The notes beneath the pieces were generated by a model. It was not told where the DNA came from, did no database searches, and saw only the letters and a program-made list of their open reading frames with translations. The position numbers were made by a program, and so were the translations under genes. Shown one piece after another: positions 175 through 60,645 of a stretch of 64,000 nucleotides of DNA. Every line of letters starts with the position of its first letter. Position 1 is the stretch's first letter. The DNA lies in the NCBI GenBank assembly GCA_030390025.1, contig CM059427.1, positions 186,434,001 to 186,498,000 on the forward strand. Direction: 5' to 3'. Source of the stretch: Squalus acanthias. Taxonomy: Eukaryota.

Positions 175-514
175 GAAAACCAAATCATATTTATTTTTTG
201 GATAACGAAGATAACATTCTATTAAAAGGACCTGACTATCCTGGGATGGCCCTGTTGTCTGGGAATGGAAACCACAGTCAGAGTGAAATATCCAGCGGCT
301 GGTTACTTTTCACAAAAGGAGTTCGGGCTGGTGGGACGCACAATGGAACGATCACTATAGAACAGTGACTTGTACCAAAGGATAGAATGGGATCCTGATA
401 CCATTAATCTGAGAATTAGAAATCCCACATTTAAATTTGCGGGATCGTTCATCTTGACTCAAACACAGCTGAGTAATAAAACCCTGGAACAGTACGAAAT
501 ATTTGGGATCAAAG
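175..514 (+). pseudogene. Copy A exon D1, cysteine-free V-like Ig domain, frameshifted
   Basis: AG at 173-174 and GTGAGT at 515. 340 bp versus 342 bp for the paralogous exon 57679-58020, about 90% identical. Confidence 0.9.
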
Positions 515-1106
515 GTGAGTGGAACAAAATCTAGATAAGGTTAATAAAATTAATTACGGAGATTCATTTCATGTGTAACGATGCGAGATTGCCAGGATCA
601 GGTGGGATTTATATCACCCAGTGCAGACAGCATCTCTCATTAACCAGGGGAAAGATTGTTTCTCTGAAATGGTCAACAAGAGTAAAAATGTTTTGACAAT
701 TCCACCAGAAATAGTGAAGCGAGGAATCTACCCCACAGAGAGCGTTATGGTTTGTAGACTGACCTTCAGCTTATTTAAATATTATAATGAGGCTGGTGTG
801 CTTCATGGTGATCCATCATTTCAAATTTAACTCTGGCTGGCCGGGTTTCCCAGGCCTCGGGGAACCCGTCAGCTAAAGGGAGGCGAGGACTGCTGGATCC
901 CAGAGGTAAGTGCCTTTAAGTACCAAAGGCGACATGAGGAAAAACTTTTTTACTCAGCGAGTGGTTATGATCTGGAATGCACTGCCTGAAAGGGTGGTGG
1001 AGGCAGATTCAATTGTGGCTTTCAAAAGGGTATTGGATAAGTACCTGAAGGAAAAAAAATTACAGGGCTATGGGGAAAGGGCAGGGGGAGTGGGACTAGC
1101 TGAGGT

Positions 1107-2598
1107 TGAAGGGATAATTACAAGTCCTAGCCCTTTCAGACTACCCCAGATCAGGCGTATTCCCCAGACGTTCACCTTCAACTGAAGTTAGCAGTAGGCA
1201 AATTCTAGAGACGCTTAATTGGGTCTAAAGGTTCAGACTATCTCTCCCGAAAGGAAAGGAACGGCCTGAAGATGTTACCATCCTCTGGATAGCACTTTTA
1301 ACAAGTTTAACTAGACTGTAACCTTCCGGATATTATGAGGGTCCGGAAAACCCCCCAGAATTCTGCAACTCGTCTCTGAAGAGTGTACAGAAATTGAGTT
1401 CGCAAGATTGATACAGAAATACTCTTTGAGACAATTTTAAAAATATATAGATTTAATAAAGAACTGACATCTAGTTAACAGCTGGTATGGCAATTGCAAC
1501 TTTAACTGTTCAAAATACAAATAGCTTACATTTCTTATCAGAGATCCTTATTCTCAAATCTTAATTTCATTACATTTCCACACTTCTACTTATTTCTTAA
1601 TCCAGAATATCCAGCAAAATCAAATACCTTGATTACCCGAGACTCAGAGTTGAAAACTTACAGAGCGTGCCTGTGAAGTTGAGAAACGCTTGCCCTTCCA
1701 GCGACTTCTGACTCTCTATCTGAAAAGCTCTATTTTTATACCTTTTTTTAGTGGTATTTTCTTTGAAGTTTCCTGCTGATGTAAGCTAATTGTCTCTAGT
1801 AATACTCTATTGAATTCTTTTCTATTCTTACTGTCATTTCAGCTGCCTACTTTTAGAATTCTGTTTCTACGTTTAGGCTGTTTCAAAAACTTATCATTTT
1901 TATGGTTATTATCGATTTATCTATTTGATGCCATTCTTAGGAAGTCTTTCTATTGAATTCTTAATATCACTTAACTGCTTGTAAGCCAGACGTCGTGACT
2001 CCGTGGTGTTCCAAGTTTAACACATAAATAATGTGATTGCTTGGTGTCATCTATTGATATTATATTTTCAAAGTCTTCCTATTTGTACCTTTTACAACTT
2101 GCAAATCAAAAACCCTTCTCTTAGGGTGTTTACTTGTTTTCTTGCTATCTCAATTGGTTGCATATTTAATCGTGTTTCCTGTTTCTAAGTTTAACATAAA
2201 ACTATTTTACGGCAGGTATTTCTTTTACTTGATGTCATTTTTTCAAAGGCACTTGGTTTTTTTAATGTTCTGTGCACCTGTTCGACGTGTTAGATTTTGA
2301 CACTTTACTTGGGCATTGCTATTGTTTTGTTCCAAACTCTAGACCTTCTGGAAGCACCAATGGTTTGCTTCAATAGGGCCATTGTTTTTGTATTTACAAC
2401 CATCTCCCATTTCAAAGCTTGTGGTGTTTTACAGCTTTTGTGTTAACACTTCACCTTATCTCAGAAGCCTGTATTGTGTTTGCAGCCTGTGTCGCCGAGG
2501 CTTTCCAGACTTTTAACCTCAGTATGTCATGTATTAATAATATCAGAAATCTATTTATAGGATGGTGTATTTTTCTGAAATATGGCTATTCCATTACA
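1107..2598 (-). mobile_element. Solo LTR, family X (1492 bp), inside a CR1 3' tail
   Basis: TG...CA termini, AGGT target-site duplication, TATA and polyA-like motifs on the minus strand, homologous to three other copies. Confidence 0.9.
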
Positions 2599-3832
2599 AG
2601 GTGCGCTTGCAGAGAGCTGACACGAGCTCGACGAGCCGAATGACCTTCTTCTGTGCTGTAACCATTCTATGATTTTATGATTCTCCTGGGTTACCCGACC
2701 GCTTTTTAGCACCCCCACTCCCGAACCGCAGCCAAATTAAAATTCCGGCCATTGTGTCAACTCAATAATATTTAGAAACCTTTAGTATAAATAAATCAAA
2801 ATCTTTAATTTCTGCCAACTAAGGATGTTGCGAATCAGCTGCACTTCCTCCTTGGTTGATGTGTGTAACATTTAAATGAGGCTGAGGTCACTGTCAAATG
2901 AACTTGAAACAAAATATAATCCAATCCTGAAATGTCGTAGTGGCCAAAATATGATCGTGACTGTACTGGGCCTGGATCATTGCTCCTGAGGTGTTGGCCC
3001 AAACTGCACCAGAATGTGTTGACCGTAATAGAAAGTCAACTCACTTACATTTGTTAGTGGCACTCATGGTACATAGTGCGTGGTACACGGGGAATGCCAC
3101 ATGGGTCGGGCACCAGAGTGTTGGGCGCCAGCAGCTAATGGATGGGACCATTTTATGGCCTGGCATTGGAAATAAAGTCCCTGTTGAAGATTTGATTCTT
3201 ACTAGTCATGTTGTAGGTGGGACTGAAAGTCAGGGTGGGCATTTTTAGAAGAAGCCTCTCCTGAAGTGCCATTCCTCATGGACGCTCAATGATTGGAGCT
3301 CTGCTCAGGAGCATTTTGGGAGCCCACTAATTGAAATAATGTAATGACTGTTGATGTGGATTTTGTGCACAGGCTCCCAGTGTGTGTGTTGGGTGGTCTT
3401 ACTGAAGTGTGCGAGGCACATTGAGAACAGAGTGGGACTGGAGCCTTCTCCATGTCTGATAATATGGGCGCTACATTTCCATCACACCCTCCTCTGGTGA
3501 GATTCCATCACCTGTCCATTGTGGTGTCGACTTCCCCAAATGCCATCCAATCTATGTAACCTTAACCTGACCCCGGATACTCCAGCAGGGTCAGGGGTAA
3601 AGGTCATCGGCCGCACTCTGGCTCATTCACACTGGCAGAGCTGGACTGAGAATTTTCGGGCCCATTGTGTTATTCTACTGATAAAATGCACTTGTGTGTA
3701 ACCTGGCCTGACTCTTTAATGCAGCAAGGTACAAGTGCTGATAATGGGCACATCCTACAGTCAGTTAGAACCTAATCGTTGGATTGTAAATGTCACTACT
3801 TACACTAAATCTTATTGATCTGTTTTTCACAG

Positions 3833-4102
3833 TTGAGTCGAGTCTACAGAGTGCTGTGGTGGGCAGTGACGTTACACTCAGCTGTACCATCTCCAAACTC
3901 TCAGATACAGTCAGTCTTCAATGGAAACAGAGAAACTCATCTCAGCAGAACAGGAGCAACACTGATCAGATCCGACTAAATAACACAGTCTATCTGATAG
4001 TCAAACATGTTGCAGTAGAGGATAAGGAGTTGAACGCGTGTGAAGTGCAGGAAAATGGATCCATTATTCTCACAGGAAAAGCAGATTTTTATGTGGATCA
4101 AT
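3833..4102 (+). pseudogene. Copy A exon D2, C2-type Ig domain (VTLSC...W...NAC)
   Basis: ttttcacAG acceptor and GTAAGT donor, phase 1/1, 270 bp open frame. F-strand YxC has become NAC. Confidence 0.9.
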
Positions 4103-4232
4103 GTAAGTGCAGTTACCTCACGGTAGATATTAAAGAGTTACTAATATTAAACTGTTACATATAAAGTGGAGTCATACATGTCAACCATCAGCACTTCATG
4201 CTTACAATCAGCTAGTGGGGGACTGGTGCACA

Positions 4233-4517
4233 TAGAAACATAGAAACATAGAAACATAGAAACATAGAAACATAGAATCTAGGAGCAGGAGTAGGCCATT
4301 CGGCCCGTCGAGCCTGCACCACCATTCAATACGATCATGGCTGATCATTCAAATCCAGTACCCTGTCCCTGCTTTAATCCCCACAGTACACATATCCCAC
4401 CCGACCCCCGTATTTAATTCCCCCTAACATATCCCATCCTATCCCCATATTTAATCCCCCCCTAACACTAAGGGTCAATTTATCATAGCCAAATCAACCT
4501 AACCCGCACATTTTTGG
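4233..4517 (-). mobile_element. Truncated HE1-like SINE with CR1-type 3' end and (TAGAAACA)n tail; absent in copy B
   Basis: Minus-strand GTCCAAAAATGTGCGGGTTAGGTTGATT...AAATTGACCCTTAGTG resembles the elasmobranch HE1 body (from memory). ACATA duplication at the ends. Confidence 0.6.
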
Positions 4518-4879: not shown

Positions 4880-7800
4880 GAACATAAGAAATAGGAGCAG
4901 GAGTCGGCCATTTGGCCCTTCGAGCCTACTCCACCATTCAATAAGATCATGGCTGATCCTCTGCCTCATCTCCACTTTCCTGCACTATCCTCATAGCCCT
5001 TATATCCCTTAATATTCAAAAATCTATTGATTTCTGTCTTGAATATACTCAACGACTGAGCCTCCACAGCCCTCTGGGGTAGAGAATTCCAAAGATTCAC
5101 CACCCTCTGAGTGAAGAATTTCTCTCATCTCAGTCCTAAATGTCCGACCCCTTATTTTGAGACTGTGAGCCCTGGTTCTAGACTCCCCAGCCAAGGGAAA
5201 CATCCTCCCTGCATCTACCCTGTCAAGCCCTGTAAGAATTTTGTATGTTGCAATGAGATCACCTCTCATTCTTCTAAACTCTCGAGAATATAGGCCTAGT
5301 CTACTCAATCTCTTCTCATGGGACAATCCCCCCATTCCAGGAACCAGTGTGGTGAACCTTTGTTGCACTCCTTCTATGGCAAGTATATCCTTCCTTAGGT
5401 AAGGAGACCAAAACTGTATACAATACTCCAGGTGTGGTCTCACCAGGGCGATATAATTGCAGTAAGACGTCTTTACTCTTATAATCAAATCCTCTTGTAA
5501 TAAAGGCAAACATACCATTTGCTTTCCTAATTGTTTGCAGTACCTGCATGTTAACTTTCAGTGATTCGTGTACAAGGACACTCAGGTCCCTCTGAACACC
5601 AACATTTCCCAATCACTCACCATTTTAAAAAATACTCTGCTTTTCTATTTTCCTACCAAAGTGGATAACTTCACATTTCTCCACATTATATTCCATTTAC
5701 CATGTTCTTGCCCACTCACTTAGCCTGTCTATATCCCCTTGAAGCCTCTTTGCATCCTCCTCACAACTTACATTCCCACCCGGCTTTATATCATCAGCAA
5801 ACTTGGATGTATTACATTTGGTCCCCTCATCCAAATCATTGATGTAGATTGTGAATAGCTGAGGCCCAAGCACTGATCCTTGCGGTACCCCACTAGTTAC
5901 AGCCTGCCAACCTAAAAATGACCCGTTTATTCTTACTCTCTGTTTACTGTCCATTAACCAATCCTCAATCTATGCTAATATATTATCCCTATCCCATGAG
6001 CCCTAATTTTGTTTAATCACCTCTTGTGCGGCACCTTATCGAATGCCTTCTGAAAATTCAAATATACCACATCCACTGCTCCCCCCTTATGTAATCTGTT
6101 AGTTACAACCTCAAAAAACTCTAACAGATTTGTCAAACACAATTTCTCTTTCATAATTCCATGTTGACTCTGCCCAATCCTATTATTATTTTCTAAGTGC
6201 TTTGTTACCACGTCCTTAATAATAGATTCTAGCATTTTCCCTGCTACTAATGTCAGACTAACTGGTCTGTAGTTCCCCATTTTCTCTCCCCCTCCTTTCT
6301 TAAATATTGGGATTACATTTGCCACCTTCCAATCCTCGGGAGTCATTGTCAAATCTATGGAATTTTTGGAAAATGACAACCAATGCATCCACTATCCCTA
6401 TAGCCACCTCTTTCAAAACCCTCAGATGTAGGCCATCAGGTCCAGGGTATTTATTGGTTTTCAGTCCCATTAACTTTTCCAGTACTATTACTAATACTAA
6501 TTTCTTTGAGTTCCTCATTCTTGCTAGACCCTTAGTTCTCCACTATTTCCGGAAAGTTTTTTGCATCTTCTTCTGTGAAGACAGACACAAAGGGCTGGAT
6601 TTTGCCAGCCGAGATGAGTTGGGGGCGGGACTGCTGCCTTCCGGGTTCTAGTCCCGCCCCCAGCCATGTCTGACGAATCTACGCTATTGTCCCTTGATTG
6701 GCCATGTAAAGCCCGCCCTGCGGGCGTACCGGCAAATAATGGGAAAGCCTGTGACAGATGACGTCAGCGTATGATGCTTCATCTGTTGAAACTTTTTTGA
6801 CAGATGAATTGTCAGCGTTTGACAGCTTCTCAAAGCTGTCAAACACTGACAATCTCTGTTCTAAGGTGAGCCCTTACACAAAGGATCACCAAGACCTCTC
6901 ACCTCAGCAGAAAGCAGATGGCTGCTGCATCTGAGAATGCAGGAGCCATTCTGTCATCTCTGCCGTTGAGACAGGCACCTCTGGATCCTCGACGGTTGAA
7001 GCCTGCAGAAGGAAGCAAAGGTAAGCAAACTCTTTTCAAAACTTTACACTCACCTCTCATACTTATCTGTCCACACTTGCACCCATCATTCACCTCTACA
7101 GCTGACATGTTGACCCCTCGCACCCCCGCAGACCCACTGCTCGCCTCGCTAACCCTGGCAAGGTTCGCAGCTGTCGGGAAGCCTGCAATTGTAGGCACAA
7201 AATGGGGAAAAGCCTCAAAACTGCCTGTTAACTACCTGTTAACTGGCAGTTAATTGGCTCTAATCCCCTTCCCACCTCGAGGAGACGGGTCCCTGCGTGA
7301 CTCAGTGACCCACCTCCCGGGAAGATGGCACGGAGGCGGGTTGGGAGCGGGGTCGGTACCGGCTCCCAGTTTCTGCCATTTTCCCGGCAGTCCCGCCTCC
7401 ATATCCGCCTCCCCAGGGCTGGGAAAATTCCCCCAAAAGTATTTGTTTAATTTCTCTGCCATTTCCTTATTCCCCATTATAGCCTGTAAGGGATCCACAT
7501 TTATCTTTGCTAATCTTCTTTTTACATACCTATAGAATATTTTACAATCTGTTTTTATGTCTCTCGCTAGTTTACTCTCATATTCTACTTTCCCTTTCTT
7601 TATCAATTTCTTCGTCCTCCTTTGCTGAATTCTAAAATCTCCCAATCCTCAGGCTTACTACTCTTTTGGACAGCATTATAAGCCTCTCCCTTTGATCTAA
7701 TACTATCTTTAACTTCTCTTGTTAGCCACGGTTGGACCACTTTTCCTGTGGGGTTTTTGTACCTTAAAGGAATGTCAATTTGTTGTAAATTATGTATTAA

Positions 7801-8347
7801 TTCTTTAAACGCTAGCCATTGCTTATCTACCATCATACCTTTTAATGTAGTTTCCCAATCTATCTTAGCCAACTCGCCCCTCATACCTACGTAGTTTGCT
7901 TTGTTTAGATTTAAGAACCTAGTTTGGATTTAACTAAATCACTTTCAAACTCAATATAAAATTCTATCATTTTATGGTCACTCCTCCCTAAAGGCCCCTT
8001 TACTACAAGGTTATTAATTAACCCTTTCTCATTGCACAATACTAGATCTAAAATAGCCTATTCCTTAGTTGGTTCCTCAACATACTGATCTAGAAAACTA
8101 TCTTGCAGACATTCCATGAATTTGTCCTCCACACTATTACTGCAAATTTGGTTTGTGCAGTTTATATGTAGATTGAGGTCCCCCATGATTATTGTATTAC
8201 CTTTGTTACATGTGCCTCTAATTTCCTGATTTATACTCTGCCCTACATTACAACTACTGCTTGGGGGCTATAAACAACTCCCACCAGTGTTTTCTGCCGT
8301 TTCTTAGCTCCACCCAAACTGATTCTACTTCTTGATTTTAAGAGCTA
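4880..8347 (-). mobile_element. 5'-truncated CR1 LINE, interrupted by a MITE; absent from the copy B intron
   Basis: RT and C-terminal ORF fragments (NYRPVSLT, QGSVLGP, FADD, HLEYCIQFW). The empty site is visible near 61137. Confidence 0.95.
6592..7434. mobile_element. Harbinger-type MITE
   Basis: Starts GGGCTGGATTTTGCC, imperfect TIR, AAA TSD, interrupts CR1. A related reverse copy lies at about 63540-64000. Confidence 0.75.
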
Positions 8348-9509: not shown

Positions 9510-10163
9510 AACGCGGAAACGCACAGGTATAAACTCTGTGCAAAATTGTTAAATACAGAAGAGACAGATGTTCCCTGTGAAAAAACCCACAGATTGCCAC
9601 CAATTCAAACAACAGCGACCTTGCTTTAAGGCTTATGTTAACGTGGGCCAGGCCCATGGAGCCGACGTGTGTCGATTTTACATGGGGGAGGTGAGCACTG
9701 GAGGCAGAATTTTGCCAAAACTCATGAAATTCAACACGGGATCTTCTTTGAATAATTATTCCATGTAAATGAGGATTGAACTTACCTGAAGGAACCATAT
9801 TTAAAACATCGCAAAATTTCACAACCTGCAGCCGCCACCAGCAGGACTCCATGTCGCTGGCCCAGCCTCAGAATATTGGGCCTGTGACGTCATGGTGTCG
9901 TCCATGGGACAGTAATCTCATCATATTAAATATCAAAAGGGGTTTATTTTATACATTTCTGTTGTCTTTTGGAAATTGAATTCACCCAAGTTGTACAATT
10001 TTTAAACAGTTCATAGCTGTGATAACACCTTATTAAATGAAGTTCCAATGATTAAAGCACAAAATATTTTTATATAATTGTAGCCGGAATTATTCTTTCT
10101 GTTCTCTTTACCTTGTGTGTATTGTAAAAATCTAACACGTTGTTCTCTGTCTCTCTATTGTAA

Positions 10164-10514
10164 ATTTATTTGGGAAGAGTTACTCACTTTATCGGTCAGG
10201 CACAGATCACAGTGAACTCGACCTAATTTGTTATCATTATTATAATTATGTTCACTCTCAAAATCATGCTGCATGGACCTGGAGGTCACATCATCTTCAA
10301 TATCGGGAGGAAGAAATAGCATTTACTTCGAAATCTCAGCTCATCAATGTAGACAGGACCTACTTTGGGAGTCGACTGGTGCCCACAGAGACAAAGTTTA
10401 ATGGCAAGAACTTCAGTGTGAGGATTGTCCCTGTGCTGTTTGAAGATGCCGGAGTTTACACATGTTCTCTGGGATCAAATAACATGATGACCATTAAATT
10501 AATCACAGTTAAAG
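10164..10514 (+). pseudogene. Copy A exon D3, V-set Ig domain (LDLIC...AAWTW...EDAGVYTC)
   Basis: Open frame LFGKSYSLYRSG...IKLITVK with canonical V-set motifs and GTAGGA donor at 10515. The polypyrimidine tract ends in ttgtAA, not ttgtAG. Confidence 0.85.
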
Positions 10515-10592: not shown

Positions 10593-10862
10593 TCACAGCT
10601 GAACCATCTGATGCAGTGACTGAGGGAGACACCGTTACCCTGACCTGCTCTGTCTCTGATGTCAATGAATCAATGAGACTTGTTTGGATCAATAGTGATG
10701 GCAAAACTGTTGGAGAAAAAACATGGAATGGATCGAATGGGGAAGAGAAATCATTGAGACTGATTATTCAGAAAGCTGACAGAGGCAGAGGGAACTGGAT
10801 ATGTGCTTTGTTTTATCAAAACAGTCCCCAGGTTTTAGTCCCGTACTATCTGGAGCCCAGTG
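10593..10862 (+). pseudogene. Copy A exon D4, C2-type Ig domain with WxC F-strand (VTLTC...W...GNWIC)
   Basis: tttccacAG acceptor and GTAAGT donor, phase 1/1, 270 bp. Separated from D3 by a 78-bp intron. Confidence 0.9.
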
Positions 10863-20598: not shown

Positions 20599-20702
20599 TG
20601 AGACCACTTCCGGAGATTTGGGTCATCACAGTTTCGGGCTACTTGTTGGTTAAACTGGGCGTTGCTGTTGGACTAATTTGCTGCTTGAAGAGGATGACCA
20701 GA
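20599..20702 (+). pseudogene. Copy A transmembrane exon (VRPLPEIWVITVSGYLLVKLGVAVGLICCLKRMTR)
   Basis: cttcacAG acceptor in phase 1, matching D4. Hydrophobic 24-aa span with a central Lys, then CC and basic residues. GTAAGA donor in phase 0. Confidence 0.8.
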
Positions 20703-22558: not shown

Positions 22559-22666
22559 ATATCGAACAGCTGGAATCCACACGAGGTGACAGGAAATGAA
22601 ACAGATGATTCACAAGAAGCCGTCGCATTACAGACCCTGAACTCTGATACTGATCTGAGATCATAG
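22559..22666 (+). pseudogene. Candidate terminal cytoplasmic exon (ISNSWNPHEVTGNETDDSQEAVALQTLNSDTDLRS*)
   Basis: tttcttgcctcttgtcAG acceptor, phase 0 compatible with the TM exon, TAG at 22664-22666. A possible AATAAA lies at 23340. No independent support. Confidence 0.5.
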
Positions 22667-25282: not shown

Positions 25283-25753
25283 TGTACATGATAAACCCCT
25301 TCGAATCCAGCACAGCTCCAGTCCTGTACATGATAAACCCCTTCGAATCCAGCACAGCTCCAGTTCTGTACATGATAAACCCCTTCGAATCCAGCACAGC
25401 TCCAGTCCTGTACATGATAAACCCCTTCGAATCCAGCACAGCTCCGGTCCTGGACATGATAAACCCCTTCGAATCCAACACAGCTCCAGTCCTGGACATG
25501 ATAAACCCCTTCGAATCCAGCACAGCTCCAGTTCTGTACATGATAAACCCCTTCGAATCCAGCACAGCACCAGTCCTGTACATGATAAACCCCTTCGAAT
25601 CCAGCACAGCTCCGGTCCTGGACATGATAAACCCCTTCGAATCCAACACAGCTCCAGTCCTGGACATGATAAACCCCTTCGAATCCAGCACAGCTCCAGT
25701 CCTGTACATGATAAACCCCTTCGAATCCAGCACAGCACCAGTTCTGGACATGA
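25283..25753. repeat. 42-bp minisatellite, 11 full units plus a partial unit
   Basis: Unit TG(T/G)ACATGATAAACCCCTTCGAATCCA(G/A)CACAGC(T/A)CC(A/G)GT(C/T)C, head-to-tail with no spacers. Confidence 0.97.
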
Positions 25754-47881: not shown

Positions 47882-49311
47882 AAATAACAACAGAAAACGC
47901 TGGAAAAACTCAGCAGGCCAGGCAGCATCCGTGGAGAGAGAAAGAGAGTTGACGTTTCAGGTCGATGACCTTTCATCAGAACTGGGAAGAGCTGGAAATC
48001 AAATAGATTTAAGGCCAGGGTAAAGCTGGGAAAAGGGGGAGGGGATAAAGGAACAAAGGAGGAGATGAAGAGACATTAAGAGACATTAAGAGATATGCAA
48101 GGCTAGAGGTGGTGTTAATGTGACAGATTAAGGCTGAATGAAGTGTGAAATCTACTGGCAGAATGAAGGACAGCTGCCAGCTTCTAGGAGGAAAAAAAAG
48201 GTGGGGGGGACAAATAAAAGGGTAGATAAAATAAAATATAAATGTGATTGGAGCTGAGGTTATGATCTAAAATTGTTGAACTCGATATTGAGTCCAGAGG
48301 GCTGTAGCGTGCCTAAACGAAAGATGAGGTGCTGTTCCTCGAGCTTACGCTGAGCTTCCGTGGAACAGTGTATTAGGCCGAGGACGGTGAGGTCAGAGTG
48401 GGAGTGAAGCGGTGAATTAAAGTGACAGGCCACCGGGAGCTCGGGGTCCCCCTTACGGACTGAACGGAGGTGTTCCGCAAAGCGGTCACCCAATCTGCGT
48501 TTGGTCTCCCCAATGTAGAGGAGTCCACATCGTGAGCAGCGAATACAGTATACTAAATTGCAGGAAGTACAAGTAAATCGCTGTTTCACCTGGAAGGGGT
48601 GTTTGGGGCCCTGGACAGTGGGAAGAGGGGAGGTATAAGGGCATGTGTTGCATCTCCTGCGCGTGCACGGGAAGGTGCCGGGCGAAGGGGAAGGGGTGCT
48701 GGGGGTGGTAGAGGAGTGGACTAGGGTGTCGCGGAGGGAGCGGTCCCTGCGGAATGCTGAAAGGGGAGGTGAGGGGAAGATGTGTTTGGTGGTGGGATCA
48801 CGCTGGAGGTGGCGGAAATGGCGGAGGATGATCCGTTGAATGTGGAGGCTGGTGGGGTGAAAGGTGAGGACAAGGGGAACCCTATCGTGGTTCCGGGAGG
48901 GAGGGGCAGGGGTGAGGGCAGATGTGCGGGAGATAGAACGGACACGGTCGAGGGCCGTGTCGACCACGGTAGAGGGGAATCCTCGGTTGAGGAAAAAGGA
49001 AGACATGTCGGAAGCACTGGTATGGAAGGTGGCATCATCAGAGCAGATGCGGCGGAGACGGAGAAACTGGGAGAATGGAATAGAGTCCTTACAGGAGGCG
49101 GGGTGGGAGGAAGTGTAGTCCAGGTAGCTGTGGGAGTCGGTGGGCTTGTAGTGAATGTTAGTCAATAACCTATCCCCAGAGATGGAGATGGAGAAGTCGA
49201 GGAAGGGAAGAGAAGAGTCGGAGATGGACCATGTGAAGGTGAGGGAAGGGTGGAAATTGGAAGCATAGTGAATGAAATGTTCTAGTTCAGGGCGAGAGCA
49301 GGAGACGGCAC
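47882..49311 (-). mobile_element. 5'-truncated Penelope-like element with an uninterrupted partial ORF
   Basis: RT thumb and GIY-YIG in ORF 48260-49311, TSD CTCTG. Confidence 0.92.
47947..47983 (-). ncRNA. Minimal type I hammerhead ribozyme in the Penelope 3' region
   Basis: Minus strand reads AGUU-CUGAUGA-A-AGGUC-AUC-GACCU-GAAAC-GUC-AACU: intact core, stem II, stem I and GUC cleavage triplet. Confidence 0.8.
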
Positions 49312-51362
49312 CTCTGGTTGGTTCCTCGACATATTGTTCCAGAAACCCATCCCGTAAACATGCTAGGAATTCCTCCTCCACAGTATTTTTACGAATTTGG
49401 TTAGCCCAATCTATATGTAAATTAAAGTCACTCATGATGACTGCTGTGCCCTTACTGCATGCTTCTCTAATTTCCCTTTAATGCCGTCCCCAACCTCCGT
49501 ATTACTGTTTGGAGGTCTATATACCACTCCCACTAACGTTTTCTGCCCCTTGTTATTTCTCAGTTCTACCTATACAGATTCCGCATCATCAGAGCTAATA
49601 TCCTTCCTTTCAATTGTGTTAATCCCCTCTTTAACCAGCAATGCTACCCCACCTCCCTTTCTTTTTTGCCTGTCTTTCCTACATATTGAATAACCCTGGA
49701 TGTTGAGTTCCCAGCCTTGGCCACCCTGGAGCCATGTTTCTGTAATCCCAATCAAATCGTATTCATTTACCTCTATTTGCGCGGCTAATTCATCCACCTT
49801 GTTCCGAATGCTCCTTGCATTAAGACACAAAGCCTTCAGGCTTGTTTTTTTAACGCTCTCAGACCTATATGAATTATTATTTACTGTGACCATGTTTGAA
49901 TTAAACCGTTGAGTTCTTTGCCTTCTACTTTTGTTTTTCTCCTTCCTGTCTTTTGCTTTTATCCTTGTTTCCCTTTCCTCTGTCTCCCTGCTCAGGTTCC
50001 CAACCCCCTGCCACTTTAGTTTAAACCCTCCCCAACAGCACTAGCAAACACTCCCCCTAGGACATCGGTCCCGGCCCTGCCCAGGTGCAGTCCGTCCCGT
50101 TTGTACTGGTCCCACCTCCCCCAGAACCGGTTCCAATGTCCAAGGAATTTGAATCCCTCCCACTTGCACCATTCCTCTAGCCACGTATTCATTTGAAATA
50201 TCCTCCTATTTCTACTCTGACTAGCACATGGCACTGGTAGCAATCCTGAGATTACTACCTTTGAGGTCCCATTTTTTAATTTATATCCTAACTCCCTATA
50301 TTCTGCTTTTAGGACCTCATCCCATTTTTTACCTATATCGTTGTTGCCTATGTGCACCATGACAACTGGCTGTTCGCCCTCCCCCTCCAAAATGTTCTGT
50401 AGCTGCTCCGAGACGTCCTTGACCCTTGCACCAGGGAGGCAACACACCATCCTGGAGTCTTGTTTGCGGCCGCAGAAACGCCTATCTATTCCCCTTACAA
50501 TTGAATCCCCTATCACTATAGCTCTTCCACACTTTTTCCTCCCAGCCTGTGCAGCAGAGCCACCCATGGTGCCAGGAAGTTTGCTGCTGCTGCCTTCCCC
50601 TGATAAGTCATCCCCCCAACAACATCCAAAGTGGTATATCTGTTTGAGAGGGGGATGGCCACAGGGGACCCCTGCACTACCTGCCTGCACCTCTTACTCT
50701 GCCTGGTGGTCACCCATTCACTTCCTGCCTGTACACCCTTTACCTGCGGTGTGACTAACTCGCTAAACGTGTTATCCACGACGTTCTCAGCATCGTGAAT
50801 GCTCCAGTATGCATCCATCCACAGCTCCAGCGCTGCAGTGCGGTCCATCAGTAGCTGCAGCTGCATACACTTACCACACACATGGTCATTAGGGACACAG
50901 GAAGCGTCTCTGATTTCCCACATATAGCAGGAGGAGCATATCACGGGGCGGAGCTCTCCTGCCATGACTTATCCTTAAATTAATTAATTAAAATTAAATT
51001 AAATGAATCCCACCAATTTCACTTCAATTAAATGATATACTCAAGGGCCCTTGTTTAACAGCAGTCCCCCCTACACCACAGAGACTCTAGAAACTATAAA
51101 CCGCAGAATTTAAGTATAGAAAAAAGGAGAAAGAGAGAAATACTCACCAACCAATCACTTACCTGCTTTCTGGTGACGTCACACTTCGATTACTTTTTAC
51201 TTCTGTCTCCCGCTCTGAGATTGGTGGACCTACCTGCTCCTCGGGCTCCCTTTTGTACTCTGCTGCCGCCACTCCACCTAGGTCCGCACCGCCGCTGCTC
51301 TTCCCTCTGCACTGCTCCACTAACATGCCTGAGTCCACAAAAAGCAGGACAAATCCTTTCTG

Positions 51363-53287: not shown

Positions 53288-53375
53288 ATGAGGCTACGAT
53301 TTTTCTGCAGCAAAATGCCAGCTGGTTTGATGTTCAGTTTCATTGTGTTTCTACTTCCGTCTGTTTTCACACAAA
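53288..53375 (+). CDS. Copy B leader exon (MRLRFFCSKMPAGLMFSFIVFLLPSVFTQ)
   Basis: ATGs at 53288 and 53315, hydrophobic signal-like core, and a phase-1 GTAAGT donor at 53376 matching the D1 acceptor. An acceptor AG at 53264-53265 implies an upstream non-coding exon. Confidence 0.75.
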
Positions 53376-53599
53376 GTAAGTGCCTTATTTCCACCGATCA
53401 CAGTCATATTGTTTTACTTCATCATAGTGTTTAATGAATTCAAGCAAGTAAGGTCTTTATTTTCATGTCCCTGCTCCTTTAAACAGGATGTGTAAGTTCA
53501 CTTTTCAGATTCAACAATGGATCAACTTAATAAAATGAAAAATGTTATCATATTTCTCGTTGCTCTTCAACTCCTTTTCCTGATCTATCTATTAAGCAA

Positions 53600-55280: not shown

Positions 55281-57678
55281 TCTCCATCTGTCTATCCATC
55301 GACTATTGCATGTAACAAACGTCCATCACACAGCTCGATGTCACATTTCAAAGTGTCACACTCACTCTGTGGAGCACTCTCTGTATTCCACGATATTTCA
55401 GATTTCAACTGCCTAACAGATTGAATGTGGTACAGAATGGTTTCAAAATTAATAACAATATTAAAATGTTAATCAATGCTAATAAAATTCGGAATTATTG
55501 AGAATCATTTTTTGTGTTCGAGGCTGTGCAACATATAAAAGTTACAGTTGGGTAAAACATCATTTGAAAAGGTTTGAAGGTTTGTTGCTGATCCTCACTT
55601 CGGGTCACATCTTGGTTTAGTGTCGAAAGGTGTTTAAACATCACTGTGAATACAGTGTGCACAGAGCCATTGTGGTTTTGGTAATTGTGATGTGAGCTGG
55701 TATTTAATCAAGACTTACAGACACATGGGATTTACTGCTTTAGATCACTTCCCTTATGACAATGTAAATAAAATAATGGTTAAAATGAGGTTTTATCAGT
55801 TTATTTTACCCTTGAAATGAAGGCATATGATGATTCGAAAGAGGAAATATAGCGATGAACTATTGACTGAATGATATGACCTCTGTCACCAGAGGCCACC
55901 TGGAAGTATCCAAATGCATTAATGTTAAATGTCACCTTCACAGCCACAGTTGTCACCTTTCACAGATAAGGCAAAGCACCTGGTGGAAAGAGGCTGCAAG
56001 TCAGCTTTATCTTCAAGGGCTGGTTTATCTCTGTCACGTTTCAGACAAGCGTGGAGTGGACACAGGAACCGCCTGATCTCCGCCCACCTCGTGAAACCCC
56101 GTCACAGGGAGGCGACCCGACATAACCGTATCCTGCACCAATCTCTCTCCCGCTAGCTCCTGTCCACCCTGATAATGTCCCCTGTAGACCAGGAGTCGCA
56201 AGGAAATTTGGAGGTTTTATCTTCTGAAATTAGCCATGTCCTCCCTTTTTATTTTTTGTAGTAATTTTGTATGTTACATAGAATTACAAAGTATTTTACA
56301 GCACAGGAACATCTCCCTCATGTACTTATCTATGTTCAGAAAGCTCTGGTAATAGATACACAGAATATCTACTGGAAGTGTTATGTTTTCCCCTGTAACA
56401 GTGCCTGCAGTGAAGGTGACATGATACAGTGCTTTCTCCTCATGTATTATTGCTTCATTGTAACCTTCTCTGGACTGAACTCCTCAATGAAGGAGCTTTG
56501 CCAGCTTCTTGGGATTGCAGTGGGAGAGGATTTCACTCTCCCTTCTTGCCCAATTTTGGATAGATTGTGGTCGGCAGGGGCAGAAAGTGGGGATGGGGAT
56601 CGGGCGGGCTGCTCCCTGCAGATTGTTGTCACTTCACTGAATATATGGACCCAAATGTGGAGAGATTTATTCAAATTGTGTGGAGAGGCCAAGTGTTATC
56701 AGATGTTACATTCACTGTCATTACTGCCATAACAACGCTGGAACACAAGGGACAGCAGCATGTTCCCAGCATCTAGCGTTGCGTTGGCTTGTGGGAGGGG
56801 ATTTCAATTTCAAATATCATTCTGAAGTAAAGCAATTGATCATGAGGCGATCAATCACCAGGCAGATTTGTCATTGATCCATAGTTGCCCCTCCTCTTCA
56901 GCTGCCTCGTGGGTAACCAGCCCTGATCTGCTGCTGCACGACCTCGAGACCCACAGCAACCACCTCCCTCCCTCTCCCAGGTGGGTTCCTCAGATCAAAG
57001 CACGAGTCCTGCTGGGAGCCCACAGTAATTATGGAAATGATGCTGATCTCAGGAAATTCCCCGGGGTTCATGGTTTGGGAAGACAGGCGGGCAGGGAGTC
57101 TTTCACACTGACCTACAGACAGATAATGGCCAAGTGGAAAATCCTGCCTCCCTTTGTTATCGGTGCTCCTGTGGGTAGCCTGGTCACTGGTGGTCCAGGA
57201 GAACCAACAACGTACTGGGCATTGCACAAGAGGAGGGGAGATCACTTGTAGAGATCGCTGACCTGATTTATGAGCCTGAAGTTTTATGACTGCACCAGTA
57301 CTGTATTCAGTTTTAGGAGAATACTGATTATTGTGATGGTAATTCAGATTTCTTAACAATATGGGAGTAACGATTCCCCTTCCACACTCCCAGTAAATGC
57401 TGGAAATACGGATTGTGAAATTGGACACTGCAGGCCCACGAGGTCAGAGTGCAGTGGCAGAAATTCACCCTCTAATGTCCTAAAGTATCAGTGGATTAGG
57501 CCAGATTATTCCAGACAGTCAGCTCTTCACCGGGGTGTGTATGTGTCATTGCTGAATCCGCTGTATATAAAAAATATGACTGTAAATAAATGAAGTCCAA
57601 TATTAATCATTACAAACATGGGATTAAGGAGTTGCGATTTAAATATTTAAATACTTACATTGTTCCTCTTTCTAACAG

Positions 57679-58020
57679 GAAACCCAAATCATATTTATTT
57701 TTTGGGTGAGGGAGATGACATTCCATTAAAAGGACCGGACAATCCTGGGAATGGCCCTGTTGTCTGGGAATGGAAACCACACTCAGGGCAAGAAATCCAG
57801 CGGCTGGTTACTTTTCACAAAGGGAGTTCGGGCTGGTGGTTCGCACAATGGAGCAATCACTACAGAAACAGTGACTTATACCAGAAGGTAGAACGGAATC
57901 CTGGTACCATTAATCTGAGAATTAGAAAACCCACATTTAAACTTGCGGGATCGTTCATCTTGACTCAAACACAGCCGAGTAATAAAATCCTGAAACAGTA
58001 CGAAATATTTGGGATCAAAG
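57679..58020 (+). CDS. Copy B exon D1, intact cysteine-free V-like Ig domain
   Basis: tctaacAG acceptor and GTGAGT donor, 342 bp open frame NPNHIYFLGEGDDIPLKGP...VVWEW...LAGSFIL...FGIK. Confidence 0.9.
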
Positions 58021-58555
58021 GTGAGTGGAACAAAGTCTAGAAAAGGTTCAATAAAATGATTCTCAGTGAATAATTTCATGTGTAATGATGAGAGATTGCC
58101 AGGATCACATGAGATTTATATCACCCAGTGCAGAGAGCACCTCTCATTAAAACAACCAGGGGAAAGATTTTGTTCATTGTTTCTCCTGAAATGGTCAACA
58201 TGAGTAAAAACATTTCGACAATTTCACCAGAAATATCAAACCGATGAATCTACCCCACAGAGAGTATTATGGTCTGTACAGTGGCACACTCTCTGTCAGA
58301 TGTACTGAATTCTGTTACCAAACCAATAGATCCCTGTAGTAATAGGCCTCAGCGCGATGGGACAGGAATAAGATGGGACAGGAATAAGATTGGCCAGAAT
58401 CACTGCTCCTGATTGCTGTCCAGTGAACCTGTTAGATGTGTCACTTGGTTTAGGTCCCAGAGGATGTCAAGTTTCCCTGGAACTCGTACTATGACAAGGA
58501 GTTAACAGCTTCACAAAAACAGGGAGAAACATAGCAGAGATAAAGAGATACATTG

Positions 58556-59342
58556 GAGGGATTTTAACGCCAAATAACGGGTGACTTGGGGTCGGGTTGG
58601 AGGTTACAGAGTTAAAAATCTGAATCCCGGCCCCAACTCCGGTCCAACCCGCCCACTTCCAGTTTTAACGGGACCGGGGGGGGGGAGGTTGAGGGGGGCA
58701 GCCAACCTGCTCGCAGGAGGTGGGTTGGCACTTTAAATATTATAATGAGCTTGGGTGCCTCATAGTGATCCACCATTTTAAATTTAATTGTGGGCTCGGA
58801 GATTCCGCCAGCTAAAGGGTGACGAGGACTGCTGGATCCAGGGCTTCTGCTTCGCCACCCTGCCCACGATCGGACACCCCTCCCCCCGACCCTTCCGATC
58901 TCCCCCCAACCTCCTCCTGATGCTGTCGACACCCCCCCCCCACAAGACCTCTGAACACTGATCTCCTCTCCTGCCTCCCGATCTGCCCGCTGGCCTTCCG
59001 AGCCCCGTCCAGACTCAGATCCCCCCTCCGGCATTCCAACCTCACCCCTCTGGCCTTTGACCCCCCCTTCAATCTCCGTACCCCTTCCGGACTTCCGCCC
59101 TCCCCCATCTGGTCTTGCGAGCGCCCTCCTCCAGCCTTCCGAACAACCTTTCTAGATCTCCGATTCCCCCCTCCAGCCTTCGACAACCCCACCAGTCCCA
59201 CCCTCCCTCCTTTCTGCGGCCTGGTGCCACAGGCTGGCTGGCTGCTGCAGGTGGGAAACAGAGATTCAAAATGTAAATCAGGCCCTGCCACTAAATTCGG
59301 CCCCGCCACTCCCTATCTGGCTCCAAATTACAATTCCGGCCA
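58556..59342. mobile_element. MITE-like repeat; relatives at about 770-915 plus 2685-2750 and, reversed, at about 62060-62600
   Basis: Shared blocks TTTAAATATTATAATGAG and CAGCTAAAGGG..CGAGGACTGCTGGATCC. Confidence 0.6.
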
Positions 59343-60375
59343 TGAATCAAAATTTTTAGTTTCTGCCAACTAAGGATGTTGCGAATCAGCTGCACTTTCT
59401 GTTTGGTTGATGTGATTAACATCTAAATGAGGCTAAGGTCACTGTCAAAGGAAGTTGGTACAAAATATAATCCAATCCTGAAATGTCATATTGGTCAAAG
59501 TATGTACTAGGCCTGGACCATTGCTCCTGAGGTGTTGGCCCAAACTGCACCAGAATGCGTTGACCATAATAGAAAGTCAACTCATTTACATTTGTTAGTG
59601 GCACTCATGGTACATAGTGCGTGGTACACGGGGAATGTCACATGGGTTGGGCATCAGAGTGTTGGGCGCCAGCAGCTAATGGATGCCACCATTGTTTTGG
59701 CCTGACATTGGAATTAAAGTCCTTGTTGAAGATTTGATTCTTACTTGTCATGTTGTAGGTGGGACTGAAAGTCAGGGTGGGCATTTTTAGAACAAGCCTC
59801 TCCTGAAGTGCCATTCCTCATGGACGCTCAATGATTGGAGCTCTGCTCAGGAGCATTTTGGGAGCCCACTAATTTAAATAACGTAATGACTGTTGATGTG
59901 GATTTTGTGCACAGGCTCCCAGTGCGTGTGTTGGGTGGTCTTACTGAAGTGTGCGAGGCACATTGAGAACAGAGTGGGACTGGAGCCTTCTCCATGTCTG
60001 ATAATATGGGCGCTACATTTCCATCACACCCTCCTCTGGTGAGATTCCATCACCTGTCCATTGTGGTGTCGACTTCCACAAATGTCATCCAAACCATGTA
60101 ACCTTAACCTGACCCCGGATACTCCAGCAGGGTCAGGGGTAAAGGTCATCGGCCGCACTCTGGCTCACTTCACGCTGGCAGAGCTGGACTGAGAATTTTC
60201 AGCCTCACTGTGTTATTCTACTGATAAAATGCACTTGTGTGTAATCTGGCCTGACTCTTTAATGCAGCAAGGTACAAGTGCTGATGATGGGCACATCCTA
60301 CGGTCAGTTAGAACCTAATCGTTGGATTGTACATGTCATTACTTACACTAAATCTTATTGATCTGTTTTTCACAG

Positions 60376-60645
60376 TTGAGTCAAGTCCACAGAGTGCTGT
60401 GGTGGGCAGTGACGTTACACTCAGCTGTACCATCTCCAAACTCTCAGATACAGTCAGTCTTCAATGGAAACAGAGAGACTCATCTCAGCAGAACAGGAGG
60501 AACACTGATCAGATCCGACTAAATAACACAGTCTATCTGATAGTCAAACATGTTGCAGTAGAGGATAAGGAGTTGTACGCGTGTGAAGTGCAGGAAGATG
60601 GATCCATTATTCTCACAGGAAAAGCAGATTTTTCTGTGGCCCAGG
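60376..60645 (+). CDS. Copy B exon D2, intact C2-type Ig domain (VTLSC...W...LYAC); gene continues past the window end
   Basis: Canonical phase-1 splice sites, 270 bp, about 96% identical to 3833-4102. Confidence 0.9.

What the first reader, a model, noticed from the sequence alone, without database searches (positions are those of the whole stretch)
175..60645. Tandem family of CD4/LAG-3-shaped four-Ig receptors that is neither CD4 nor LAG-3
Seen: leader-V-C2-V-C2-TM-tail assembled from phase-compatible exons of two paralogues, with WxC in D4. Known: V-C2-V-C2 with WxC C2 domains typifies the CD4/LAG-3 family. Here, however, D1 is a single exon, D2 has YxC, and the probable tail lacks the Lck-binding CxC/CxH and LAG-3 FxxL motifs. 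Inference: a lineage-specific, duplicating leukocyte receptor family in cartilaginous fish undergoing birth-and-death evolution, possibly functionally uncharacterised.
Basis: partly seen in the sequence, partly recalled or inferred. Interest (0 to 1): 0.85.

Follow-up and report, generated by a model that had tools for sequence, protein, structure and literature searches.

The report
CD4-shaped paired immune receptor genes
Two neighbouring shark genes, one of them apparently broken, belong to an old and unnamed fish family of four-domain surface receptors that are shaped like CD4 and LAG-3 but come in matched activating and inhibitory versions, as natural-killer-type receptors do.

Summary
The exons are real. 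Copy B has a leader, D1 and D2. Copy A has D1, D2, D3, D4, a transmembrane exon and a tail. The Ig exons are in phase 1, and contigs from four public runs join B's D1 to D2 at the predicted site.

Copy A looks like a pseudogene. It has two 1-bp deletions with stops in D1 and AA at the expected D3 acceptor.

Relatives are all auto-annotated as uncharacterised proteins. They occur in sharks, rays, a chimaera, bichir, sturgeons, paddlefish, an eel, cyprinids and a coelacanth, and a lamprey protein shares the D4-like unit. The family is therefore not confined to cartilaginous fish.

It is a paired-receptor family. Of 131 proteins, 28 have a lysine transmembrane helix, 50 have ITIM tails and none has both. 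Same-species pairs share up to 97% of the ectodomain. The window genes are the activating type.

A predicted structure of the closest relative matches CD4 and LAG-3 best. Rat CD4 D3-D4 scores Z 16.0 at rmsd 2.7 Å. A family profile ranks LAG-3 just below CEA.

It is neither CD4 nor LAG-3: it lacks both tail motifs and D2 has YxC. Single exons give only generic Ig matches. Synteny and a joint tree were not done.

The parts
175..514 (+). Copy A, D1 exon (Cys-less V-like domain). Broken: two 1-bp deletions relative to copy B, in-frame stops, and a length of 340 nt that gives phase 1 in and phase 2 out.
   Evidence: Alignment with copy B; translation and phases; tblastn hits in three frames.
3833..4102 (+). 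Copy A, D2 exon (Ig domain, 270 nt, phase 1/1). The conserved LY.C reads LNAC here.
   Evidence: About 97% identical to copy B's D2.
10164..10514 (+). Copy A, D3 exon (V-set). Homology to relatives starts at 10164, but the dinucleotide before it is AA, not AG. The next in-phase AG would start the exon at 10200 and drop 12 codons.
   Evidence: Pfam V-set 1.1e-6; tblastn; sequence; phases; paralogue contigs that continue from D2 into a D3 starting at the homologous position (loose ends).
10593..10862 (+). Copy A, D4 exon (C2-like Ig, NWIC = WxC, phase 1/1), after a 78-nt intron.
   Evidence: Pfam ig 2.7e-7; 342 library hits, 14 of them at E<=1e-30.
20599..20702 (+). Copy A, transmembrane exon: IWVITVSGYLLVKLGVAVGLICCL KRMTR, with a lysine in mid-helix; phase 1 in, phase 0 out.
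   Evidence: (77% to P0005 435-473).
22559..22666 (+). Copy A, cytoplasmic tail exon ISNSWNPHEVTGNETDDSQEAVALQTLNSDTDLRS, stop TAG at 22664-22666. No Tyr, Cys or Phe.
   Evidence: The motif is conserved in activating members.
53288..53375 (+). Copy B, leader exon (ATG at 53288, signal peptide, phase 1 out, donor GTAAGT).
57679..58020 (+). Copy B, D1 exon (342 nt, intact, Cys-less V-like domain).
   Evidence: (75% to P0005). No Pfam family. High contig depth and a splice joint to D2.
60376..60645 (+). Copy B, D2 exon (270 nt, intact, LYAC).
   Evidence: (Ig_2 3e-8). Joint 58020/60376 in contigs.

Best explanation
The window holds two head-to-tail genes of an ancient multigene family of fish type I membrane receptors. 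Copy A appears dead. Copy B is intact as far as the window reaches, and it is expressed and spliced.

The ectodomain is leader-V-C2-V-C2, built as two stiff V-C2 rods like CD4 and LAG-3. D1 is a fast-diverging V-like domain without cysteines and is the likely ligand-binding tip. That role is inferred.

The family is a paired-receptor system. Some genes, including copy A in this window, end in a transmembrane helix with a central lysine and a short tyrosine-free tail. Others have nearly the same ectodomain but a plain helix and a long tail with two ITIM-type tyrosine motifs.

Inferred mechanism:
- The lysine form pairs in the membrane with an acidic ITAM adaptor of the DAP12 or FcR-gamma kind and activates leukocytes.
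- The ITIM form recruits SH2 phosphatases and inhibits.
- Both see the same, still unknown, ligand.

Shown here: exons, splicing of D1 to D2, family membership, the two mutually exclusive tail types, and predicted CD4-like structure. Inferred only: adaptor use, ligand, cell type, and true common descent with CD4/LAG-3.
For: - Exon anatomy and phases.
- Homologues of the D4 exon: 342 proteins at E<=1e-3 and 14 at <=1e-30 among 1.84e9 representatives.
- The family alignment A3 shows the two tail types.
- Of 131 fetched proteins covering at least 150 profile positions, 28 have the [YF]L[LFV][VIG]KL lysine helix, 50 have family ITIMs, 0 have both and 53 have neither.
- Same-species activating/inhibitory pairs share 97.0% (435 aa), 97.0% (335 aa), 91.0% and 86.8% ectodomain identity.
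- AF2 model of P0005: pLDDT 79.3, pTM 0.72, with single strands 132-147 and 336-350 running across the D1/D2 and D3/D4 borders.
- Foldseek: 7 of the top 10 hits are LAG-3 or CD4.
- VIA second look: ranks 1-4 are four-domain CD4, Z 18.0-15.9.
- VIA against 48,161 chains: rank 1 is rat CD4 D3-D4, Z 16.0, rmsd 2.7 Å, 170 of 177 residues aligned; the next hit is Z 14.1.
- Profile against the PDB: four LAG-3 sequences at 8e-9 to 1e-7 with WxC aligned, and CD4 at 1.5e-7.
- Expression: depth is in the hundreds to 2,900 on B's D1 and D2 against 0-25 in the intron, in 4 runs from 2 studies. A GT..AG joint lies at 58020/60376.
Against: - Exon-by-exon searches do not single out CD4/LAG-3. D1 has no Pfam hit and only a chance PDB hit. 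D2 and D3 hit antibodies, pIgR, MXRA8 and VNAR first. D4's best hit is CD276, and LAG-3 reaches only E 0.04.
- No CD4-specific Pfam family appears in 8 homologues.
- In the profile search CEA ranks first, and pIgR, MXRA8, PD-L1 and NCAM are close behind LAG-3/CD4. The sequence signal is a ranking, not a gap.
- The structure is a prediction for a 75-84% identical protein of another species, not for the window gene. AF2 may lean on what it learned from CD4.
- D2 has YxC, not WxC.
- The runs laid are labelled 'RNA?' by guess.
- Only copy A shows the TM and tail, and copy A looks dead.
- Adaptor, ligand and cell type are untested.
Confidence: 0.7

Rival explanations
1. The genes are extra copies or orthologues of shark CD4 or LAG-3 themselves.
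For: Same domain order, WxC in D4, single-exon D1, and best structural matches to CD4 and LAG-3. Takizawa 2023 reports CD4 pseudogene fragments near catshark CD4 (section 3.2, read).
Against: The tail has neither Cx(C/H) nor (F/Y)xxL(D/E). The family carries a lysine TM or ITIM tails instead. D2 has YxC. Members number in the dozens per search, with several LOC entries per species. None of the 78 or 113 listed proteins is named CD4 or LAG-3. Takizawa 2023 cites other accessions as examples of shark CD4/LAG-3 family sequences than the catshark members found here.
Confidence: 0.02
2. It is a branch of another known Ig family (B7/CD276, CEACAM, Siglec/CD22, FcR-like, CTX/JAM or CD2/SLAM), and the likeness to CD4/LAG-3 is convergent or an artefact of structure prediction.
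For: Automatic names include CD276 homolog, CEACAM5-like, VCAM1-like and obscurin-like. The D4 exon's top PDB hit is CD276. CEA tops the profile search, and PD-L1 aligns across the V-C junction at 4e-7. The ITIM pair resembles Siglec/CEACAM1 tails; that comparison is recalled, not tested. D1 lacks the disulfide, as CD2/SLAM V domains do (also recalled). Teleost multi-Ig proteins fill the middle of the list.
Against: Those hits are short or owe their score to many repeats: CEA has 7 domains, and the teleost hits match only query residues 3-40. Two-domain superpositions favour CD4 D3-D4 (Z 16.0, rmsd 2.7 Å) over CAR (13.3), CD166 (12.7), CD48 (12.3, rmsd 6.5) and CD200R-like (12.0). LAG-3 is the top non-repeat protein in the profile search, with WxC aligned.
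Confidence: 0.2
3. The family is a structural or adhesion Ig protein (obscurin- or VCAM-like), not an immune signalling receptor.
For: Source names 'obscurin-like' and 'vascular cell adhesion protein 1-like'. 8-Ig members exist.
Against: These are type I membrane proteins with a signal peptide. They have mutually exclusive lysine-TM and double-ITIM tails and near-identical paired ectodomains. That design is known from immune paired receptors, by established knowledge of KIR, SIRP and Siglec pairs. They are multicopy and fast-evolving.
Confidence: 0.05

Closest known systems
CD4 (T-cell coreceptor)
   Same: Four Ig domains in V-C2-V-C2 order. The predicted model shows two rods with a continuous V-G to C2-A strand. 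It has WxC in D4 and a CC at the inner end of the TM helix. It gives the best structural matches: Z 18.0 over 317 residues for the whole ectodomain, and Z 16.0 at rmsd 2.7 Å for D3-D4. D1 is a single exon, as in shark CD4 (Takizawa 2023, section 3.2).
   Different: There is no Cx(C/H) LCK motif. D1, not D3, lacks the disulfide. D2 has YxC. The TM carries a lysine. The family is multicopy with ITIM-tailed partners. Sequence identity is 12-16% in the structural alignments. No CD4-specific Pfam family is hit.
LAG-3 (CD223)
   Same: Same domain order. It is the top non-repeat hit of the family profile in the PDB (8.4e-9), with D3-end plus D4 aligning to both LAG-3 D1-end plus D2 and D3-end plus D4, and WxC in register. 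It is Foldseek rank 1. LAG-3 D3-D4 scores Z 13.2 at 22% identity.
   Different: There is no (F/Y)xxL(D/E) tail motif. The inhibitory members use classical [ILV]xYxx[ILV] motifs instead. D2 has YxC. The family is multicopy and paired with activating forms.
Paired activating/inhibitory Ig receptors (KIR, LILR, SIRP, Siglec-5/14, PILR, CD300; in fish NITR, LITR; in skate MDIR). Named from established knowledge; no sequence comparison was made here.
   Same: A gene cluster. Near-identical ectodomains carry either a basic TM residue with a short tail or ITIM tails. The membrane-distal domain diverges fast. Pseudogenes sit among live copies.
   Different: The ectodomain is V-C2-V-C2 in CD4-like rods. 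That is neither the C2/I-type strings of KIR/LILR nor the V or V-I layout of NITR. 8-Ig versions exist. The activating tail carries its own conserved acidic motif (ETDD..A[VI].LQTLNSDTDL).
Lamprey V-C2 receptors with WxC: the 'CD4-like' of Pancer 2004 (paper not held) and the ITIM receptor NICIP (PMC5071834, passages read)
   Same: A Lethenteron protein (P0081) has three V-C2 units with WxC. These match family profile positions 303-436 at 66, 57 and 36 bits, and the protein has a tyrosine-motif tail. NICIP is described as V-set plus C2-set, a TM and two ITIMs.
   Different: Whether P0081 is CD4-like, NICIP or neither was not tested, because no sequences were available to me. The unit number differs, and no match to D1 was found.

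Membership tests
CD4/LAG-3 family | Ectodomain of four Ig-like domains in the order V-C2-V-C2 (Takizawa 2023, sections 3.1 and 3.6) | tested here: met
   There are four Ig exons. D3 is V-set and D2 and D4 are Ig. D1 is a V-like fold in the AF2 model of P0005, matching V domains at Z 12-13.7.
CD4/LAG-3 family | WxC motif in strand F of D4 | tested here: met
   NWIC in window D4. It is aligned with the LAG-3 D2 and D4 WxC motifs in the profile search.
CD4/LAG-3 family | WxC motif in strand F of D2 | tested here: not met
   Copy B has LYAC and copy A has LNAC. Y is nearly invariant at this column in 29 relatives.
CD4/LAG-3 family | Continuous beta-strand from V strand G into C2 strand A, giving rigid D1D2 and D3D4 rods | tested here: met
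   This holds in a predicted model only. DSSP strands 132-147 and 336-350 cross both borders. D3D4 superposes on rat CD4 D3D4 at rmsd 2.7 Å over 170 residues.
CD4/LAG-3 family | Cytoplasmic Cx(C/H) (CD4) or (F/Y)xxL(D/E) (LAG-3) | tested here: not met
   The copy A tail has no Cys, Phe or Tyr. Relatives carry a lysine TM or ITIMs.
CD4/LAG-3 family | Position in the conserved LAG3-CD4 genomic neighbourhood | not testable with these tools
CD4/LAG-3 family | CD4 or LAG-3 as top matches in database similarity searches | tested here: inconclusive
   None of the 78 and 113 listed relatives is named CD4 or LAG-3. Single exons give generic Ig hits. The family profile ranks LAG-3 2nd-4th and 6th, and CD4 from 7th, of 1,103 PDB sequences.
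Paired activating/inhibitory Ig receptors (functional class) | Closely similar ectodomains joined to opposite signalling ends within one genome | tested here: met
   Identity between lysine-TM and ITIM proteins of the same species is 97.0%, 97.0%, 91.0% and 86.8%. Of 131 proteins, none carries both ends.
Paired activating/inhibitory Ig receptors (functional class) | Basic residue inside the TM helix of the short-tailed form | tested here: met
   GYLLVKL in window exon 20599-20702. The same motif occurs in 28 relatives.
Paired activating/inhibitory Ig receptors (functional class) | Physical association with an ITAM adaptor, and SHP recruitment by the ITIM form | not testable with these tools
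   This needs co-precipitation and signalling assays.
B7 / CD276 | Specific similarity of the V and C domains to B7 members across whole domains | tested here: inconclusive
   CD276 matches only residues 1-38 of D4. PD-L1 aligns across the V-C junction at 4e-7 to 2e-5, weaker than LAG-3. No B7 member is in the top 50 structural rows.
CD2/SLAM | Disulfide-less V domain followed by a C2 domain with SLAM-like geometry | tested here: inconclusive
   D1 lacks cysteines. NTB-A scores Z 13.3 for one domain, and CD48 Z 12.3 at rmsd 6.5 Å for two domains, below CD4. No SLAM or CD2 sequence is in the top 60 of the profile search.

The most novel reading that the evidence does not exclude
This family is the surviving sister, or an ancestral-type relative, of CD4 and LAG-3: a germline-encoded, rapidly diversifying, paired activating/inhibitory receptor system built on the same V-C2-V-C2 rod. 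On this reading CD4 (activating) and LAG-3 (inhibitory) are a fixed single-copy pair derived from such a system. The family itself would then be a candidate for the long-sought NK-type or myeloid paired receptors of sharks, possibly recognising MHC class II-like or other polymorphic ligands. The lamprey V-C2(WxC) protein would push the module back before jawed vertebrates.
Probability: 0.22. Interest if true: 0.9.

Novelty: new variant of a known kind. Interest (0 to 1): 0.68.

Why it matters
To my knowledge (recalled, not searched) no multigene paired receptor family comparable to KIR, LILR or NITR has been established for sharks, and the origin of the CD4/LAG-3 pair is open.

This is a family with the CD4/LAG-3 body plan that switches between a DAP12-type lysine helix and ITIM tails. 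It is present from chimaeras and sharks to sturgeons, eels, cyprinids and coelacanth. It offers a concrete candidate for innate lymphocyte or myeloid recognition in early jawed vertebrates. It also offers a testable model for how an MHC coreceptor and its inhibitory twin arose.

The family is already in public annotations as 'uncharacterized protein'. Cloning, expression mapping and ligand screens are therefore directly feasible.

One caveat on priority. Two papers (Redmond 2018; Smith 2019; passages read) say that Venkatesh 2014 noted 'several CD4/Lag3-like molecules' lacking CxC. A nurse-shark entry (V9NJF3, 'Obscurin-like protein') belongs to this family. The family may therefore have been glimpsed in a supplement I could not open.

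Tried and rejected
- Single-exon searches. Pfam and PDB searches with single exons gave only generic Ig matches. D1 gave none beyond a chance match to a neurotoxin fragment at E 0.27, which I disregard.
- A TM helix straight after D4. A candidate at 10939 has only about 10 hydrophobic residues and was dropped. The real TM exon lies 9.7 kb downstream.
- Tail exons by splice-site scan alone. This was inconclusive, and homology settled it.
- First classifier for tail types. It was too loose on family membership, because full-sequence E-values let in teleost multi-Ig proteins, and too narrow on motifs. I replaced it.
- CD4-specific Pfam families. None appeared in 8 homologues.
- Literature. Seven searches found no description of this family. 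I read Takizawa 2023 (sections 3.1 part 1, 3.2 and 3.6, plus passages). I read passages only of Venkatesh 2014, Redmond 2018, Smith 2019, the lamprey NICIP paper PMC5071834 and PMC8813856. Pancer 2004 is not held.
- Not obtained. I could not get shark CD4 or LAG-3 sequences through the tools, so there is no joint tree. The last word-index search reached no protein named CD4 or LAG-3.
- Not done by rule. The exons of the window were never joined into one protein for any search or fold. Full-length work used database proteins of other species.

Full report
WHAT IS IN THE WINDOW. The window has no N runs and consists mostly of retroelement ORFs. A self-comparison shows one segmental duplication on the + strand:
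- 68-756 matches 57571-58278 at 87%.
- 2791-4234 matches 59342-60777 at 94.5%.
- 4515-4879 matches 60770-61137 at 96%.
- 8347-9286 matches 61136-62067 at 90%.
- Copy A has an extra insert at 4881-8346.

I read the DNA and ran tblastn with database homologues. This gave eight exon blocks and no others. Copy B has a leader at 53288-53375, D1 at 57679-58020 and D2 at 60376-60645, and then runs off the window. Copy A has D1 at 175-514, D2 at 3833-4102, D3 ending at 10514, D4 at 10593-10862, a TM exon at 20599-20702 and a tail at 22559-22666. Its leader lies before the window. The Ig and TM exons enter in phase 1, the TM exon leaves in phase 0, and the tail enters in phase 0.

STATE OF THE TWO COPIES. 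Copy B's three exons are intact with AG/GT sites. Copy A has several lesions:
- Its D1 has two 1-bp deletions relative to B, giving stops and a 340-nt exon that breaks the phase.
- Its D2 has LNAC where 29 relatives keep LY.C.
- Relatives begin D3 with (Y)L(F/Y)..., which corresponds to window 10164, but the dinucleotide before that is AA.
- No AG occurs from 10084 to 10175, and the next in-phase AG, which would start the exon at 10200, would drop 12 codons.

I read copy A as a pseudogene. The caveat is that I did not check these bases against reads.

EXPRESSION. One run search found eight holders with 16-29% of the words. That is about the exon share of the query. All are labelled 'RNA?' by guess. 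I laid four of them, from two studies, on 57400-60900.
- Word depth is 130-1,790 over D1 and 270-2,900 over D2, against 0-25 in the intron.
- One contig in X2 skips 58018 to 60374 with GT..AG; moved two places on, this is exactly 58020/60376.
- Contigs in X1, X3 and X4 that begin at 60370 carry 13 loose letters equal to the end of D1.
- After D2, loose ends read as D3 starts of paralogues at the homologous acceptor position. Others differ and are unexplained.

Contigs cannot give level or strand. Still, the exon-only pattern and the joint speak for spliced RNA.

EXON-BY-EXON IDENTITY.
- Pfam: D1 has no family. D2 hits Ig_2 at 3e-8 and other Ig models. D3 hits V-set at 1.1e-6. D4 hits ig at 2.7e-7. 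The TM exon has none.
- PDB by sequence, D1: one chance hit at E 0.27.
- PDB by sequence, D2: antibodies first, and CD4 D1 at 0.0076.
- PDB by sequence, D3: pIgR, MXRA8 and VNAR.
- PDB by sequence, D4: CD276 at 2.9e-4 over 38 residues. Among the hits shown, only LAG-3 D2 aligns over nearly the whole D4 (query 1-86), at E 0.04.

On their own, the exons say 'Ig superfamily' and little more.

THE FAMILY. The D4 exon, searched against 1.84e9 representatives, gave 342 proteins at E<=1e-3, 80 at <=1e-10 and 14 at <=1e-30. The middle of that list is teleost multi-Ig proteins that match only residues 3-40 many times over. They are 'uncharacterized protein', 'hypothetical protein' or 'Ig-like domain-containing protein', plus a few automatic labels: CD276 antigen homolog, CEACAM5-like, VCAM1-like and obscurin-like.

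Species with members:
- Sharks: Scyliorhinus, Chiloscyllium, Hemiscyllium, Stegostoma, Rhincodon, Ginglymostoma, Heterodontus, Carcharodon, Cetorhinus, Heptranchias and Pristiophorus.
- Rays and skates: Pristis, Mobula, Hypanus, Hemitrygon, Narcine, Leucoraja, Amblyraja and Rhinoraja.
- The chimaera Callorhinchus.
- Bony fishes: Polypterus, Acipenser, Huso, Polyodon, Anguilla, Triplophysa, Puntigrus, Misgurnus and Latimeria.

Several species have runs of neighbouring LOC numbers. The closest protein is P0005 of Pristiophorus japonicus, at 64-84% per exon. The bony-fish proteins match the family profile end to end:
- eel units: 281 bits over positions 25-464
- bichir: 308 bits
- coelacanth: 298 bits

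A lamprey protein (P0081) matches positions 303-436 three times, at 66, 57 and 36 bits, and has WxC in each unit.

PAIRED DESIGN. Alignment A3 of 29 members shows one ectodomain and two endings. One ending is ...IW.IT.SGYL[LF]VKL...GLI.. followed by a short tail with ETDD..A[VI].LQTLNSDTDL. The other is a plain helix and a long tail with (E/D)IHY[GA]S[IV].F and SVIYAQI.

Of 247 proteins fetched up to that point, 131 have a stretch covering at least 150 of 507 profile positions. Of these, 28 carry the lysine helix, 50 carry family ITIMs, none carries both, and 53 carry neither. The 53 are truncated models, secreted-looking forms, or sturgeon tails with YDNV/YENC.

Within species, lysine and ITIM proteins share most of the ectodomain:
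- P0005/P0179 share 97.0% over 435 aa.
- P0208/P0223 share 97.0% over 335 aa.
- P0201/P0209 share 91.0%.
- P0188/P0154 share 86.8%.
- One pair (P0159/P0198) shares only 55%.

Copy A's TM and tail are of the lysine type. No ITIM exon is in the window. Many species also have 850-1,014-aa members with eight Ig domains, among them a nurse-shark entry, V9NJF3.

LIKENESS TO CD4 AND LAG-3. A profile of A3 was searched against 177,635 PDB sequences, and 1,103 matched at E<=1. CEA is first at 3e-14, the sum over seven domains. Then come four LAG-3 sequences at 8.4e-9 to 9.7e-8, pIgR at 2.2e-8 and CD4 from 1.5e-7. MXRA8, PD-L1 and NCAM follow at 3e-7 to 6e-7. The LAG-3 alignments pair D3-end plus D4 with both LAG-3 D1-end plus D2 and D3-end plus D4, putting nWtC on pWgC and pWqC. 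Per-stretch E-values are only 0.004-0.02.

An AF2 model of P0005 built on A3 has pLDDT 79.3 and pTM 0.72. Single strands 132-147 and 336-350 cross the D1/D2 and D3/D4 borders. Takizawa 2023 (section 3.6, read) describes this as rare and typical of CD4/LAG-3.

- Foldseek against 350,542 chains: LAG-3 is at ranks 1, 2 and 9, and CD4 at ranks 3, 5, 6 and 8. The other three of the top ten are engineered antibody fusions.
- VIA-align on Foldseek's top 985: ranks 1-4 are four-domain CD4, with Z 18.0, 17.9, 16.8 and 15.9 and 317-327 residues aligned. Of the top 30 rows, 18 name CD4 (15) or LAG-3 (3).
- VIA-align on 48,161 representatives without Foldseek: rank 1 is rat CD4 D3-D4 at Z 16.0, rmsd 2.7 Å and 170 of 177 residues. 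Next come single V domains at Z 14.1 or less. LAG-3 D3-D4 scores Z 13.2 at 22% identity.

None of 8 homologues hits a CD4-specific Pfam family.

WHY IT IS NOT CD4 OR LAG-3. The tail has no Cys, Phe or Tyr. D2 has YxC. The copies are many and paired. Takizawa 2023 (sections 3.1 and 3.2, read) describes one LAG-3 and one intact CD4 in catshark, and cites as examples shark sequences that annotation programs named as CD4/LAG-3 family. The catshark members found here carry other LOC and XP numbers and are unnamed. The same paper says shark CD4 and LAG-3 have no intron in D1.

WHAT I COULD NOT DO.
- A joint tree, because no CD4 or LAG-3 sequence reached me through the tools.
- Any test of adaptor, ligand or cell type.
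- Reading the supplement of Venkatesh 2014. According to Redmond 2018 and Smith 2019 (passages read), it lists 'several CD4/Lag3-like molecules' lacking CxC.

Seven literature searches found no paper describing this family.

VERDICT. It is wrong on restriction to cartilaginous fish. It also misses the main functional point: this is a paired activating/inhibitory receptor family, and the window carries its activating type.

Noticed in passing
window 25283-25753: A tandem array with a 42-bp period, about 95% alike between copies. It gives long repetitive ORFs in all frames on both strands.
   Followed up: no
window 29409-30472 (+) and 48260-49435 (-): Two copies, about 88% alike, of a retroelement ORF ending in a cysteine-rich block and a ...LLYIGETKRRLGDRFAEHLRSV... 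motif. From memory this resembles the GIY-YIG end of Penelope-like elements. It was not tested.
   Followed up: no
window 4881-8346; also 11.6-17 kb, 44-47 kb and 51.3-55.3 kb: LINE-type reverse-transcriptase ORFs fill the introns and the 30-kb spacer. One insertion, at 4881-8346, is present in copy A's D2-D3 intron and absent from copy B.
   Followed up: partly
window 68-756 vs 57571-58278, and 2791-4234 vs 59342-60777: The two copies differ by 13% around D1 but only 3-5.5% around D2. Most of the differences in the D2 exon change the amino acid (my reading of the alignment). This may reflect a mosaic duplication or conversion history, or selection on D1.
   Followed up: partly
proteins P0250-P0275, P0267 (not in the window): Many species have members of 850-1,014 aa with eight Ig domains (D1-D4 followed by a second, distinct D1'-D4' set) and ITIM tails. 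A nurse-shark entry, V9NJF3, is named 'Obscurin-like protein'. In D2' the second cysteine is replaced (LYTWEV).
   Followed up: partly
protein P0081 (Lethenteron reissneri): A lamprey protein has three V-C2 units, each with WxC, and a tail with tyrosine motifs. It matches the family's D3-end plus D4 at up to 66 bits. It may relate to the published lamprey 'CD4-like' or NICIP molecules, but this was not tested.
   Followed up: partly
window 22559-22666 and alignment A3, columns about 590-690: The short tail of the activating forms is conserved across the sharks in alignment A3, and a skate protein (P0013, Leucoraja) has a close variant (GNETDD..EA[VI]ALQTLNSDTDL). That is unusual for receptors thought to signal only through an adaptor.
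   Followed up: no
proteins P0125, P0163-P0169, P0241 (sturgeons, paddlefish): Sturgeon and paddlefish members end in ...DIYDNVENIYENC, two YxN motifs rather than ITIMs. This suggests a third signalling type in the family.
   Followed up: no
window 60638-60646 (table 7): Contigs leaving D2 continue in at least four different ways. Two read as D3 starts of paralogues. Two others (in X3 and X4) resemble no exon in the window and may be alternative splice forms or other family members.
   Followed up: no
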